Notes under the pieces: generated by a model
Databases searched by the model: none
The model's input: the letters and a program-made list of their open reading frames with translations, nothing else
Told to the model about the DNA's origin: nothing
Virus record (IMG/VR): IMGVR_UViG_3300041411_000080
Span: 248,001 to 312,000 of that record
Direction: 5' to 3' (one strand)
Length of the DNA stretch: 64,000 nt
Shown here: piece after piece, positions 19,188-36,570 of the stretch
Layout: each line of letters starts with the position of its first letter
Numbering within the stretch: position 1 is the first letter of the stretch
Position numbers and translations under genes: made by a program

Positions 19188-19272
19188 TAAGTAATTCATT
19201 TAAAAAGCAAATTACAAAAGCTCTTTAGTAAACAAGTTTACTGTTGTAAATTGCTTCTCCTAGAATTACTTA
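19188..19272. repeat. AT-rich nested inverted repeat (long imperfect palindrome)
   Basis: TAAGTAATTC/GAATTACTTA, AAGCAAATTACAA/TTGTAAATTGCTT (12/13), AGTAAAC/GTTTACT. Confidence 0.85.
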
Positions 19273-19863
19273 TGCGGCGGGCGGGGTCACCAGCATCCCG
19301 CTGACCAGCCGATCGAATTTCTCGTCATCGAATACATCAAGCGTTTTGGGACAGGTCTCGGCGATGTCGAGATCCTTTATGCATTCAAGGCTACCTTTGG
19401 CGTATATCCTACCCGATGCACTATGCTCATGATTAAAGCCGCCACATGGAACACGGTAAAAATCAGCTTCAATGTCATAAGCAATGATCTTACCGGGTAG
19501 ACCCTCCAATTTAGGCTTATCGCGCATGATGGTCAGATGAACTGGGTTATCTAGAGTCTCGATCGAAATGAATGTCTCTACGTCAAACTCAGTATCTAGC
19601 TTACGACAACCATCATAGTAACCTTTGTTCGGACGCTCATACAGGTAAGGGCTTGCCAGATGCTCGTCCATCCTCTTTCTGAACCGAGCTACACGATCAA
19701 CTACCTTTGGATCTTCCATTTGAATAAGCCACTTATTTACAGTAGCTTTAAATTCTGGAGACGGTTCAAAGAACCAGAAGGTAGCATTACGGAATGAAAT
19801 GATATTCCAAACGTCGTACAGAGCCCACAGGTGCTTTAACTTACCTTTGCTGATGCGTGACAT
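19270..19863 (-). CDS. hypothetical protein, RISKGK N-terminal family
   Basis: MSRISKGKLKHL. Confidence 0.8.
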   Translation of the reverse strand: MSRISKGKLKHLWALYDVWNIISFRNATFWFFEPSPEFKATVNKWLIQMEDPKVVDRVARFRKRMDEHLASPYLYERPNKGYYDGCRKLDTEFDVETFISIETLDNPVHLTIMRDKPKLEGLPGKIIAYDIEADFYRVPCGGFNHEHSASGRIYAKGSLECIKDLDIAETCPKTLDVFDDEKFDRLVSGMLVTPPAA

Positions 19864-20032
19864 TCAATACGTCCTCAATGAGCTTACGATGCGTTGGAAG
19901 GTCTTCTGACGCTACACCTGGAGTCACCGATAGTAAAGCTAGTCCGGCAAAGTACCGAACCCGCATATCCTGAACGGTATTGGCTGTAGACTGATATGGA
20001 AACGACAAACTAATGGCTGGAAGATTAGACAT
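19841..20032 (-). CDS. small hypothetical protein
   Basis: start MSNLP overlapping previous stop. Confidence 0.5.
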   Translation of the reverse strand: MSNLPAISLSFPYQSTANTVQDMRVRYFAGLALLSVTPGVASEDLPTHRKLIEDVLNVTHQQR

Positions 20033-20357
20033 CGGTCGGACCCTTCTCAGTGAATAGTGTAACCATAGGTAACCCATGACGAGGTTGTCCAGTACTCTTG
20101 TCGACCTCAACCACACGTTGTCGTCTAACTGGAACATCCAACGCTAGGTAAGATTCAGGTATACCCATTTCAACCATGAGCTTATTAGCATTCTCAGTTA
20201 ACCTGCGGCGAAAATCCAACCGTTTGGCATTTAAAGCTTTAAGCTGTGAATGCGTAAGAACTGGTTGGCTGAACACCTCACGGAGTTTACCGAGTTGCAT
20301 CAGACCACGGTATACCTGAACTAGATACTGACGCTTACCCTTGGATACTCTGGCCAT
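20025..20357 (-). CDS. hypothetical protein, RISKGK N-terminal family
   Basis: MARVSKGKRQYL. Confidence 0.8.
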   Translation of the reverse strand: MARVSKGKRQYLVQVYRGLMQLGKLREVFSQPVLTHSQLKALNAKRLDFRRRLTENANKLMVEMGIPESYLALDVPVRRQRVVEVDKSTGQPRHGLPMVTLFTEKGPTDV

Positions 20358-20601
20358 TAGACTGGTACCCCTCTAATATTTCATTTCTGATCTTTTGGAG
20401 AATTGCTTCTGTTGCAGCAGATGGTTTAACGAAAGGTTTAATTTCTACATTTCGTGAATTAGTGCAGAGTGTGGTACTTAAGCTCTGTGCCTTCGCAGCT
20501 AAAGCAAAAAGATCTATTTTACCGTTACGGATAAACTTGTCACGAAATACCATAGCGGCAATATGGTCAACCAGAAACTTTCTTTTACCTTTACTAATCA
20601 T
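20335..20601 (-). CDS. hypothetical protein, RISKGK N-terminal family
   Basis: MISKGKRKFL. Confidence 0.75.
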   Translation of the reverse strand: MISKGKRKFLVDHIAAMVFRDKFIRNGKIDLFALAAKAQSLSTTLCTNSRNVEIKPFVKPSAATEAILQKIRNEILEGYQSNGQSIQG

Positions 20602-20977
20602 CTATCCAGTCCTCATCGTCTAGTGACGGGTTAACACAATTTTCAGAACGTTTGCGGTGCCACGCATTATCTCGGATGGCAGCTTCTTCGAAGAAGGTTG
20701 TGTAACCACCTACCCCTTCGTAATCACGTTCCCCGGCCTTACCCCATAGGTTCATTCCGGTACGACGATATTCAGCAGCGTCTTCATGACCACCCACCTC
20801 AGTACGGCGATCAGATTCAACTGGATCATTACGTGCCACGGTCTCATCACGGAAGTAGTTATGTGACCATTCACACCCCATTCCGTTAGATGCTGTTCTT
20901 ACTTGTTCGTAACACCGATATTTGTAGCGCTTGAGACCTCGGTTAAGCCCCCGGAAGAGAGTTACTGATGATGACAT
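20594..20977 (-). CDS. hypothetical protein
   Basis: start MSSSV with AGGAG RBS. Confidence 0.7.
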   Translation of the reverse strand: MSSSVTLFRGLNRGLKRYKYRCYEQVRTASNGMGCEWSHNYFRDETVARNDPVESDRRTEVGGHEDAAEYRRTGMNLWGKAGERDYEGVGGYTTFFEEAAIRDNAWHRKRSENCVNPSLDDEDWIDD

Positions 20978-21131
20978 AGCACGCTCCTGTGTAAACCACC
21001 GCTGAGGCAATGTAGAGTACCCGGCGATCTTTAGCATCCCAGTTAGGACTCAGACTACCCAACATGAAAACGTAGCTGGCAAGAACAACACTAATGGTCA
21101 AGCAAACAATACCGATAATAACCCAAGGCAT
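20943..21131 (-). CDS. small two-TM membrane protein
   Basis: two hydrophobic stretches, AAGGA RBS. Confidence 0.65.
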   Translation of the reverse strand: MPWVIIGIVCLTISVVLASYVFMLGSLSPNWDAKDRRVLYIASAVVYTGACYVIISNSLPGA

Positions 21132-21141
21132 GATCTAATCC

Positions 21142-21357
21142 TTATTTGCAGAAACTGAAGAGTTGGCCGAGCGATGGAGTAGCTGGCTTTGGAGCAGGTT
21201 CATCTGGTTGGTAATTAAGCATCCCATTACTATCGGTAAGCTTAAAACCTTTAACCTCATTAGCCTTGGCAGCTTCTTGTTTGAGTGCGTACTGACGATT
21301 GTGTTCGGCGGTTGCTGCAATCTTACGGATACGGTGGAAACTATTCTTTTTAGCCAT
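21142..21357 (-). CDS. small basic hypothetical protein
   Basis: GAGG RBS, 71 aa. Confidence 0.7.
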   Translation of the reverse strand: MAKKNSFHRIRKIAATAEHNRQYALKQEAAKANEVKGFKLTDSNGMLNYQPDEPAPKPATPSLGQLFSFCK

Positions 21358-21358
21358 G

Positions 21359-21568
21359 TTACGCCTCGAAGTGATAATTAATTGTTACGGTGGCACCTGT
21401 AACATCATAGGGTTTATTTTCACAACCTACCGGATACATGTTCGTGTACATCTTACCACGGTGATATCCAGTGAGAAGACCAGTCTTGAGATTTTCACAC
21501 AATACAAAATCACTGTAACCGAATAGGTCACGGAGATAACGGAACTTACCTTTAGATATTCGTGCCAT
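21359..21568 (-). CDS. hypothetical protein, RISKGK N-terminal family
   Basis: MARISKGKFRYL. Confidence 0.75.
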   Translation of the reverse strand: MARISKGKFRYLRDLFGYSDFVLCENLKTGLLTGYHRGKMYTNMYPVGCENKPYDVTGATVTINYHFEA

Positions 21569-21873
21569 TAGTTTCCACCATGGTCGTTATTAGGATGCCA
21601 GCGATCCCGAGTGTTGGAGTTAGATCGAGCATCACCACGGAACCAAAGATTTGTTTCAGCATTGGGACTAGCTTCAAGGACCAAGATGTTACCATCGGTA
21701 CCACGTCTCACCCGTCCTGCATACCAACAACATTCTGCATCTCTTTCTTCTCGATAATGCAAAACAGCTTGACGATTAGTATACATAACGAAACGACTTG
21801 GATCTCGTCCCATCATAACTCCATCACGCTGTCCGTGGTAACTAGCAGTTTTTAAATCATGACGTACGCCCAT
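21568..21873 (-). CDS. hypothetical protein
   Basis: start MGVRH with GAGG RBS, first gene after promoter variant 21903. Confidence 0.7.
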   Translation of the reverse strand: MGVRHDLKTASYHGQRDGVMMGRDPSRFVMYTNRQAVLHYREERDAECCWYAGRVRRGTDGNILVLEASPNAETNLWFRGDARSNSNTRDRWHPNNDHGGN

Positions 21874-21902: not shown

Positions 21903-21930
21903 ATGATATAAATTTGAAATAAATTGTGTT
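21903..21930 (-). promoter_or_regulatory. early promoter variant
   Basis: TATATCAT core with AT-rich upstream, immediately after a terminator. Confidence 0.5.
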
Positions 21931-21932
21931 GA

Positions 21933-21963
21933 CGACATAAACCCCTACCCGAAGGTAGGGGCT
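21933..21963 (-). terminator. hairpin terminator with TTTATGTC tail
   Basis: CCCCTACC-TTCG-GGTAGGGG-TTTATGTC. Confidence 0.8.
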
Positions 21964-23123: not shown

Positions 23124-23180
23124 GGTTACAGACCTCGATAAAGTTATTGGATACAAATGATAAAAGAAAAAAGAAAGCTA

Positions 23181-23203
23181 ACCCCCTCCATTACGGAGGG
23201 GGC
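23181..23203 (-). terminator. hairpin terminator
   Basis: CCCCCTCC/GGAGGGGG stem, T-rich run downstream on minus strand. Confidence 0.75.
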
Positions 23204-23208
23204 TATTA

Positions 23209-36402: not shown

Positions 36403-36570
36403 TTAGCAGTAGATCGACATGTAAGCTCGATTCTGTCGGTCCATGAATCCTGACAGATGAAGTTGACGTGCTCGGATGATAGCACGACGAGTGATAGCCA
36501 TATCTTGCGCAGCCTCACCCACGATACGAATCAGATACTTCCGCTTATTTTTATTAAGCTTATTTGCCAT
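36403..36570 (-). CDS. 55-aa basic protein (MANKLNKNKRKYL...), RISKGK-like N-terminus, not in ORF track
   Basis: GAGGA RBS; last gene before terminator. Confidence 0.7.
   Translation of the reverse strand: MANKLNKNKRKYLIRIVGEAAQDMAITRRAIIRARQLHLSGFMDRQNRAYMSIYC

What the first reader, a model, noticed from the sequence alone, without database searches (positions are those of the whole stretch)
19270..21568. Shared N-terminal R(I/V)SKGK tag on otherwise unrelated early proteins
Seen: four genes of one operon start MSRISKGKLKHL (19863), MARVSKGKRQYL (20357), MISKGKRKFL (20601) and MARISKGKFRYL (21568). Their lengths (197, 110, 88, 69 aa) and downstream sequences are dissimilar. Codons differ (CGC ATC AGC / AGA GTA TCC / ATT AGT / CGA ATA TCT), so this is a peptide-level motif, not a DNA repeat. 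A variant, MANKLNKNKRKYL, begins the unannotated ORF 36403-36570. Inference: a docking or address tag sending different cargo domains to one target (phage-nucleus import machinery, ribosome/RNA, or a host hub), or a site for Lys modification.
Basis: seen in the sequence. Interest (0 to 1): 0.72.

Follow-up and report, generated by a model that had tools for sequence, protein, structure and literature searches.

The report
Shared N-terminal tag on early phage proteins
At least seven otherwise unrelated families of small early proteins in a group of nucleus-forming Pseudomonas jumbo phages begin with the same 12-16-residue peptide, a portable module that most likely docks them onto one common partner that is still unknown.

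Summary
[ILV]SKGK occurs four times in the six-frame translation of the 320,858-bp genome (about one expected). All four copies are at ORF starts, on one strand, within 1.7 kb, and each is followed by xx[YFH]L.

The 55-aa variant at 36570 is a degenerate member: its orthologues begin LSKGKRKHL and LTKGKRKYL.

Conservation is at the protein level. Ser switches between TCN and AGY, Leu and Gly codons vary, and there is no shared RNA fold.

Profile comparison finds similarity only in the first 12-45 columns. With the tag removed, probability is 2.3% or less.

A tag profile searched against 1.84 billion protein representatives found 17 hits. Sixteen are at residue 1 of small proteins of this phage clade (201phi2-1, Viktualia, Phabio, PhiPA3 and two metagenomic genomes). 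None was found in phiKZ or Noxifer.

The tag is separable from its cargo. The DnaB-helicase-fragment protein is tagged here and in Phabio but untagged in 201phi2-1 and Viktualia.

The operon carries the same promoter motif as chimallin, so early expression is likely.

AlphaFold2 places the tag at the start of an N-terminal helix, and the conserved residues lie on one helical face.

Best reading: a portable docking or address helix with an unknown partner. It is not the general nuclear-import signal and not a T4-type capsid-targeting sequence. I found no description of it in the literature.

The parts
21903..21945 (-). Phage promoter-like element (AT-rich upstream part plus TATATCAT) in front of the tagged operon
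   Evidence: TATATCAT occurs 13 times on the minus strand and never on the plus strand, with an extended consensus. The same motif precedes chimallin in this genome, and precedes the gp50-53 operon, the gp99-102 operon and chimallin in 201phi2-1.
21942..21961 (-). G+C-rich hairpin ending the upstream transcription unit, preceded by three stop codons in a row
21568..21873 (-). First ORF of the operon, 101 aa, untagged, no family match
21359..21568 (-). Tagged gene, 69 aa (family D). Tag codons are 21521-21568.
   Evidence: Orthologues are G002 67 aa, P0009, P0010 and P0012.
21142..21357 (-). Untagged 71-aa ORF, by position the counterpart of 201phi2-1 gp50
20943..21131 (-). Untagged 62-aa ORF with a hydrophobic stretch, a likely membrane protein
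   Evidence: sequence; no family match.
20594..20977 (-). Untagged ORF of about 127 aa. Its stop overlaps the start of the 88-aa tagged gene.
20335..20601 (-). Tagged gene, 88 aa (family C). Tag codons are 20560-20601. Conserved island G[KQ]IDLF.
   Evidence: Orthologues are G002 89 aa and P0022.
20025..20357 (-). Tagged gene, 110 aa (family B, orthologue of 201phi2-1 gp52). Tag codons are 20310-20357. Invariant C-terminal LPMVTLFTEKGP.
   Evidence: AlphaFold2 model: helices 6-28 and 36-63, disordered tail.
19841..20029 (-). Untagged 62-aa ORF. Its stop codon lies inside the GGT-AAG of the next tag.
19270..19863 (-). Tagged gene, 197 aa (family A, mosaic). Tag codons are 19816-19863.
19510..19659 (-). 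Segment of the 197-aa protein copied from a DnaB-like helicase (Pfam PF20307 positions 264-310 of 356)
   Evidence: It is 48% identical over 40 aa to the phage's own intact helicase.
36403..36570 (-). Variant-tagged gene, 55 aa (family E, orthologue of 201phi2-1 gp24). Tag codons are 36520-36570.
   Evidence: The orthologues carry LSKGKRKHL and LTKGKRKYL.

Best explanation
The motif is a portable N-terminal protein module of about 12-16 residues. Its consensus is M, then 0-3 residues (often x-R/K), then [ILV]-[ST]-K-G-K-x-x-[YFH]-L-x-x-[LVI]-[YF]. It heads at least seven unrelated families of small early proteins in the 201phi2-1 / Phabio / PhiPA3 group of nucleus-forming Pseudomonas jumbo phages.

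Shown here:
- It is real.
- It is found only at N-termini.
- It is kept by selection on the peptide, not on the DNA or RNA.
- It is separable from its cargo.
- The genes lie behind the chimallin-type promoter.

Inferred:
- Ser/Thr caps an N-terminal alpha-helix, and K-G-K forms its first turn.
- The conserved residues (I4, K8, Y11, L12, L15, Y16, with G7 at the edge) form one face of that helix.
- That face docks into one common partner, so the module would act as an adaptor or address tag bringing different small effector modules to the same place early in infection. One of these modules is a fragment of the phage's own replicative helicase.

The partner is unknown. The basic cap suggests an acidic or phosphate-rich target: a nucleic-acid machine, a membrane surface, or an acidic protein groove.
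For: Statistics and position: four copies against about 1 expected, and 0.01 expected for the extended motif; all are at ORF starts.

Protein-level selection: synonymous and six-fold codon switching occurs inside the tag. Between orthologues the tag is 58-83% identical against 26-54% for the rest. No conserved RNA structure was found.

Unrelated cargo: hhalign probabilities reach 95% with the tag, covering only the first 12-45 columns, and fall to 2.3% or less without it. One cargo is homologous to a helicase domain.

Portability:
- The helicase-fragment protein is tagged here, in G002, in Phabio gp39 and in several metagenomic proteins. It is untagged in 201phi2-1 gp53 and Viktualia.
- The middle module of Phabio gp39 exists untagged in this genome.

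N-terminal restriction and clade limits:
- 16 of 17 hits among 1.84 billion representatives start at residue 1; one starts at residue 7, just after an internal Met of an over-extended ORF call.
- The tag is present in 201phi2-1 (gp24, gp52, gp101), Viktualia (2), Phabio (2), PhiPA3 (1) and G002 (5). It is absent from phiKZ, Noxifer and an Erwinia relative.

Helix: AlphaFold2 starts a helix at residue 6 in both models. The helical-wheel angles of the conserved positions fall within about 180 degrees, and the variable positions lie opposite.

Early expression: the promoter motif is shared with chimallin. PMC11512511 associates this kind of AT-rich motif in 201phi2-1 with early genes.
Against: No partner was identified.

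The only complex prediction, the 110-aa protein with Pseudomonas DnaN, gave no answer.

The structural models have modest or poor confidence (pLDDT 63 and 43). In the 110-aa model the conserved face could pack against the protein's own second helix.

The residues just after the tag are not consistently amphipathic.

PhiPA3 carries only one tagged protein, so an assembly made only of different tagged proteins cannot be the essential function.

A shared N-terminal peptide could also act on translation or turnover rather than on binding.
Confidence: 0.45

Rival explanations
1. Compartment address signal: the tag sends these proteins to the phage nucleus, the early infection vesicle or the PhuZ spindle. 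This is a special case of docking, and it is the first reader's leading idea.
For: The genes are early and lie near phuZ and chimallin in relatives. A helicase fragment would be expected to act where the helicase is. The motif is N-terminal and portable.
Against: The review PMC12908238 states that cargo is targeted through surface residues of the folded protein, not a terminal signal. Whole-genome scans find no tag on any gene other than 1-5 small ORFs per phage. phiKZ has a nucleus, PicA and PhuZ but no tag. 201phi2-1 gp53 lacks the tag although its orthologues have it.
Confidence: 0.12
2. Translation-level element: the nascent N-terminal peptide tunes early elongation or initiation of these early messages.
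For: The motif always lies within the first 5-9 codons. In a defined E. coli system, synthesis of MVSKGK stalled or aborted at residues 4-5 and was about five times less processive than MVKYQK (PMC6920384). The tag core directly after Met is M-I-S-K-G-K.
Against: Conservation runs to residues 12-16 (Y, L, L, Y), beyond the codon 3-5 ramp. The register shifts by 2-3 codons between orthologues (M-ISKGK versus MAR-ISKGK) without loss of the motif. Invariance of specific residues across many families fits binding better than a yield effect.
Confidence: 0.12
3. Shared descent without a shared external partner: the families are extremely diverged or mosaic paralogues. They would keep an ancestral N-terminal helix for a generic job such as self-association or folding.
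For: Some family pairs align over 25-45 N-terminal columns, not just 12. Several families are predicted to be helical. The genes are clustered and shuffled.
Against: No similarity remains once 13 residues are removed. One cargo is clearly of separate origin, a helicase fragment. The tag is lost and gained independently of cargo. Near-invariance of K, G, K and L across all families is hard to explain by a generic structural role in different folds.
Confidence: 0.15
4. N-terminal degron: the tag marks early proteins for timed removal by a host AAA+ protease such as ClpXP or Lon.
For: N-terminal position and early genes. From memory, ClpX N-terminal recognition motifs (Flynn et al. 2003) are short, basic and polar, and one loosely fits I-S-K-G-K-x-K-x.
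Against: The match to those degenerate motifs is weak and fails in several families. Nothing was tested here. Degrons seldom keep an invariant Gly and a Y-L pair.
Confidence: 0.08
5. Capsid-targeting sequence like that of the T4 internal proteins: the tag loads the proteins into proheads for injection.
For: This is the best-known case of one short N-terminal peptide on divergent phage proteins (PMC9026906). Neighbouring genes (201phi2-1 gp48 and gp49, Phabio gp35 and gp36) are virion proteins by mass spectrometry.
Against: The promoter is the chimallin type. No conserved Glu-type protease site follows the tag. gp24, gp52, gp101 and Phabio gp39 are not flagged as virion proteins in records where their neighbours are.
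Confidence: 0.04
6. Nucleic-acid element: a translational operator, a coupling signal or a recombination site that happens to be translated.
For: K-G-K is mostly AAR GGT AAR. In several genes the upstream gene's stop codon lies inside the tag's coding sequence.
Against: GGT is the genome's usual Gly codon (65%), and GGG and GGA also occur. Ser and Leu switch codon families. The 201phi2-1 gp101 tag shares almost no bases with the others. No conserved RNA pairing was found.
Confidence: 0.02

Closest known systems
Capsid-targeting sequences of the T4 internal proteins (IPI, IPII, IPIII, Alt)
   Same: A 10-19-residue N-terminal peptide is shared by small, basic, otherwise divergent phage proteins. 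The cargo set varies between related phages, and the tag is portable to foreign cargo (PMC9026906).
   Different: No sequence relation. The T4 peptide is a propeptide ending in a prohead-protease site on late, virion-packaged proteins. Here the promoter is the chimallin (early) type, no protease site follows, and the proteins are not listed among virion proteins.
Cargo-loading peptides of encapsulins, and N-terminal trafficking modules of polymorphic effectors (own knowledge)
   Same: The logic is the same: one short conserved address on many unrelated cargo domains.
   Different: Different position or length, different sequences and different organisms. No shell or secretion partner has been identified here.
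N-terminal basic helix of phiKZ014, an early jumbo-phage protein that clamps 5S rRNA
   Same: It is an early protein of a related phage whose N-terminal helix uses basic and aromatic residues (R10, K15, W18, R23) to grip a host machine (PMC10914614).
   Different: No sequence similarity: the PhiPA3 homologue's N-terminus is unlike the tag. It is one protein family, not a tag shared by several.
PicA/Imp-dependent import into the phage nucleus
   Same: The same virus family, and the same general question of how small phage proteins are sorted.
   Different: Recognition is reported to use folded surface patches, not a terminal peptide. The whole-genome scans find no tag on any gene other than the small ORFs listed, and phiKZ has none.
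Short N-terminal translational ramps and the synthetic SKIK tag (the latter from own knowledge)
   Same: The first few residues after Met, rich in Ser, Lys and Ile, change protein output. MVSKGK was shown to stall early elongation.
   Different: Those effects involve codons 3-5 only. Here the register varies and conservation extends to residue 16.
Sliding-clamp-binding pentapeptides (QL[SD]LF) and the APIM motif (own knowledge)
   Same: The tag's [KR]-[YFH]-L-[LIV]-x resembles APIM. Conserved islands in three cargo families resemble QLxLF.
   Different: These are low-information matches. The complex prediction with DnaN gave no answer. Nothing ties them to a clamp.

Membership tests
T4-type capsid-targeting sequence | Short N-terminal peptide shared by otherwise divergent small proteins | tested here: met
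T4-type capsid-targeting sequence | Propeptide ends in a prohead-protease site (Glu-type) | tested here: not met
   No conserved Glu or S/A/G-x-E in positions 1-19 across 33 sequences.
T4-type capsid-targeting sequence | Protein is present in virions and expressed with head genes | tested here: not met
   Chimallin-type promoter. The orthologues are not flagged as virion proteins in records that flag their neighbours. This rests on annotation only.
Sec or Tat signal peptide | Hydrophobic core of 10 or more residues and a signal-peptidase site; twin arginine for Tat | tested here: not met
   The residues after the tag are mixed polar and hydrophobic (mean hydrophobicity about 0), and no RR is conserved.
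Ordinary paralogue family with one fold | Detectable similarity along the proteins outside the shared N-terminus | tested here: not met
   BLASTP. hhalign without the tag gives probability 2.3% or less for all 21 family pairs. Folds could not be compared because the models are weak.
DnaB-like replicative helicase (PF20307), for the 197-aa protein | Complete ATPase domain with its nucleotide-binding motifs | tested here: not met
   Only profile positions 264-310 of 356 are present. The intact helicase is elsewhere in the genome.
Cargo of PicA-dependent nuclear import | Localises inside the phage nucleus in a PicA-dependent way | not testable with these tools
   Needs microscopy. The literature says there is no terminal signal.
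Beta-clamp-binding protein | Motif docks in the clamp's hydrophobic cleft | tested here: inconclusive
   Complex prediction with DPO3B_PSEAE: score 0.01, verdict 'no answer'.
RNA or DNA regulatory element | Conservation of bases or base pairs rather than of residues | tested here: not met
   Codon table. RNAalifold found 0 pairs in 15 sequences.

The most novel reading that the evidence does not exclude
The tag is the first linear sorting signal of a nucleus-forming phage. It would be a short N-terminal peptide sufficient to deliver arbitrary cargo to one infection-specific structure (early infection vesicle, nascent nucleus or spindle) by a route separate from PicA's surface-patch recognition.
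Probability: 0.12. Interest if true: 0.85.

Novelty: new variant of a known kind. Interest (0 to 1): 0.6.

Why it matters
Most early genes of nucleus-forming jumbo phages have no known function. How their products are sorted among cytoplasm, infection vesicle, nucleus and spindle is an open question.

A 12-16-residue peptide shared by at least seven unrelated early protein families gives one handle on all of them. Finding its partner would assign a common site of action to a whole set of orphan genes. If the peptide is sufficient for targeting, it would be a ready-made tag for delivering probes during infection.

The finding also shows that these phages build small early proteins by shuffling modules: the tag, a helicase fragment and short conserved islands.

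Tried and rejected
- Pfam, PHROGs and PDB sequence searches of the tagged proteins and their neighbours gave nothing except the helicase fragment.
- The language-model atlas search of the tag region gave only low-scoring, uninformative hits.
- AlphaFold2 of the 197-aa family was too poor to use (pLDDT 43), so no fold search was run.
- The complex prediction of the 110-aa protein with two copies of P. aeruginosa DnaN returned 'no answer'. It counts neither way.
I used degenerate DNA patterns instead. Besides true hits these returned one non-coding chance match and two integrase-internal chance matches.
- Comparison with chimallin's termini, the PhiPA3 homologue of phiKZ014 and the helicase's own RKGKAYL hairpin gave no convincing relation.
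- Amphipathicity after the tag is inconsistent between families.
- Phyletic profile: 42 ORFs are shared by the tag-bearing phages only. Many are shadow ORFs, and no obvious receptor stood out.
- An MxTLFTE match in a 431-aa protein is not conserved in relatives, so I treat it as chance.
- Laying metagenome contigs on the operon showed related strains about 95% identical. The variant list was truncated and the runs are DNA, so they gave no information on expression.
- The literature searches found no description of the motif.
Full report
**What is there**

The window is bases 248001-312000 of a 320,858-bp phage genome with direct terminal repeats and 46.6% G+C. It was recovered from a rhizosphere metagenome.

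Its relatives are the nucleus-forming Pseudomonas jumbo phages 201phi2-1, Viktualia, Phabio and PhiPA3.

So does the 55-aa ORF at 36403-36570.

**Is it more than chance?**

[ILV]SKGK occurs exactly four times in the six-frame translation of the whole genome. All four copies are these ORF starts. Composition predicts 0.98 copies anywhere. It predicts 0.010 copies of the extended [ILV]SKGKxx[YFH]L.

**Peptide or nucleic acid?**

Across 17 tagged genes from six phages:
- Ser uses both TCN and AGY.
- Leu uses CTN and TTA.
- Lys uses AAA and AAG.
- Gly is mostly GGT, the genome's usual Gly codon at 65%, but also GGG and GGA.

Between orthologues the 12-residue core is 58-83% identical, while the rest of the proteins is 26-54% identical. 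Many codons differ while the residue stays the same.

An alignment of 15 start regions has no conserved base pairing. Selection therefore acts on the peptide.

**Are the cargoes unrelated?**

BLASTP finds nothing between the four proteins once the tag is removed. I grouped all tagged proteins into seven families:
- A: the 197-aa type
- B: the 110-aa type, 201phi2-1 gp52
- C: the 88-aa type
- D: the 69-aa type
- E: the 55-aa type, 201phi2-1 gp24
- F: 201phi2-1 gp101 and Viktualia 124 aa
- G: the PhiPA3 61-aa ORF

With the tag, profile-profile comparison matches every pair, but only over the first 12-45 columns (probability up to 95%). With 13 residues removed, no pair exceeds 2.3%.

Family A contains a stretch homologous to positions 264-310 of the divergent DnaB-like ATPase family. 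This stretch is 48% identical over 40 residues to the phage's own intact helicase. That cargo therefore has an independent origin.

**Portability**

The helicase-fragment protein carries the tag in this genome, in the 324,912-bp metagenomic relative G002, in Phabio gp39 and in several metagenomic proteins. Its orthologues in 201phi2-1 (gp53) and Viktualia start about 30 residues later, without a tag. They sit directly behind the tagged gp52-type gene.

Phabio gp39 has a middle module that exists as an untagged 62-aa ORF in this genome.

The 55-aa variant in the window (LNKNKRKYL) has orthologues with LSKGKRKHL and LTKGKRKYL. It is therefore a degenerate member.

**Distribution**

I searched a profile of 14 tag regions against 1.84 billion representative proteins. 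It gave 17 hits with E below 0.001. Sixteen lie at the very start of proteins of 51-232 aa that belong to the families above or are mosaics of them. The seventeenth is a repeat protein.

Whole-genome scans found the following:

| Phage | Tagged ORFs |
|---|---|
| This genome | 5 |
| G002 | 5, in the same layout |
| 201phi2-1 | 3 (gp24, gp52, gp101) |
| Viktualia | 2 |
| Phabio | 2 |
| PhiPA3 | 1 (unannotated 61-aa ORF) |
| phiKZ | 0 |
| Noxifer | 0 |
| Erwinia phage pEa_SNUABM_54 | 0 |

The tag is never internal. The residues between Met and the core number 0, 2 or 3, and this varies within families.

**Expression**

The nine genes from 21873 down to 19270 are packed or overlapping. A hairpin lies upstream at 21961-21942. 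It is followed by an AT-rich element ending in TATATCAT at 21910.

TATATCAT occurs 13 times on the minus strand and never on the plus strand. TATATTAC occurs 16 times on the minus strand and 3 times on the plus strand. Both have extended consensus flanks and sit 30-80 bases before ORFs.

The same element precedes chimallin in this genome. In 201phi2-1 it precedes the gp50-53 operon, the gp99-102 operon and chimallin.

A transcript-mapping study of 201phi2-1 links an AT-rich motif about 10 bp upstream of start sites to early genes (PMC11512511). [quoted passage not shown] I could not compare my motif with that paper's logo, because figures and supplements are not held. 'Early' is therefore a well-supported inference, not a measurement.

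**Structure**

AlphaFold2 with an 11-sequence alignment gives the 110-aa protein two helices (6-28 and 36-63). Its tail is disordered and carries an invariant LPMVTLFTEKGP (pLDDT 63, with 74-80 over the first 20 residues).

The 197-aa model is poor (pLDDT 43) but also starts a helix at residue 6.

On a helical wheel the conserved positions 4, 5, 7, 8, 11, 12, 15 and 16 fall within about 180 degrees. The variable positions 9, 10, 13, 14 and 17 lie opposite. Ser/Thr at position 5 is where a helix N-cap would sit.

This pattern fits a helix that presents one conserved face. Because the bodies behind it differ, a common external partner is the simplest reading.

**Mechanism and rivals**

I commit to a portable docking or address helix (0.45). 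The partner is unknown.

It is not the general nuclear-import signal. Published work finds that cargo is recognised through folded surfaces. The scans find the tag on only a handful of small ORFs per genome and on nothing else. phiKZ has none. A special sorting role remains possible (0.12).

It is not a T4-type capsid-targeting sequence. No protease site follows, the promoter is the chimallin type, and the orthologues are not listed as virion proteins although their neighbours are.

A translational role deserves a test. MVSKGK stalls early elongation in vitro (PMC6920384). However, the variable register and the conservation out to residue 16 argue against it.

A degron and a merely inherited helix are the other rivals.

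**What did not work**

The one complex prediction allowed tested whether the conserved tail or the tag of the 110-aa protein docks on Pseudomonas DnaN. It gave no answer.

Family, structure-sequence and atlas searches were empty.

A phyletic profile left 42 ORFs specific to tag-bearing phages, with no obvious receptor among them.

The literature searches found no description of the motif.

**Verdict**

The modular-tag interpretation is supported, its target is not known, and the feature appears undescribed.

It is a new variant of a known kind of thing: a shared N-terminal address or docking peptide. It is of moderate-to-good interest because it offers a single experimental handle on many orphan early genes of nucleus-forming phages.

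Noticed in passing
window 19510-19659 (-), inside the 197-aa gene: A 50-residue copy of the C-terminal strand-turn-strand region of the phage's own DnaB-like helicase. By analogy with DnaB, from my own knowledge, this is the motif H4 / arginine-finger region. It sits in a small early protein that has no ATPase core. It could be a helicase decoy or regulator. Relatives keep it with or without the tag.
   Followed up: partly
window minus strand: 52629, 50376, 47407, 42432, 25718, 6140 (TATATTAC); 21910, 11020, 2906 (TATATCAT): Two strand-specific promoter-like motifs with extended consensus flanks and a GTG about 4 bases downstream. The same type precedes chimallin here and in 201phi2-1, so they probably mark the early (virion RNA polymerase) regulon.
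   Followed up: partly
window 23179-23205 and 21942-21961: Two G+C-rich hairpins. On the minus strand each is preceded by GTAATAATAG, three stop codons in a row. Pieces of this region match several places on other contigs of related strains, so it looks like a repeated terminator cassette.
   Followed up: no
window 20335-20357 and 19841-19863: The upstream gene's stop codon is the TAA formed inside the tag's GGT-AAG (88-aa gene into 110-aa gene; 62-aa ORF into 197-aa gene), 20 bases after the downstream ATG. The same holds in G002. Elsewhere the stop falls in ATT-AGT or AGT-AAA of the tag. This means dual coding and possibly translational coupling.
   Followed up: partly
window 20025-20063 (C-terminus of the 110-aa protein); about 20506-20520 (88-aa protein); about 19315-19335 (197-aa protein): Conserved short islands outside the tag: LPMVTLFTEKGP in a predicted disordered tail, G[KQ]IDLF, and PKTL[DE]VF. 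They resemble sliding-clamp-binding pentapeptides, but the information content is low and the DnaN complex prediction gave no answer.
   Followed up: partly
window 19274-19412: In contigs from two other public runs that are about 95% identical elsewhere, the 3' end of the 197-aa gene is replaced by 291 or 50 unrelated bases. The C-terminal module of this mosaic gene varies between strains.
   Followed up: no
PhiPA3 NC_028999 108243-108428 (L024:1501-1686): A 61-aa ORF starting MASRISKGKRRYL lies in an unannotated gap between two annotated genes. It is probably a missed gene.
   Followed up: partly
Phabio MF042360 263658 (+): A second tagged ORF with a variant tag (MISRNKRKYLEREY, 102 aa) lies far from the phuZ-side locus. 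It may be an eighth cargo family.
   Followed up: no
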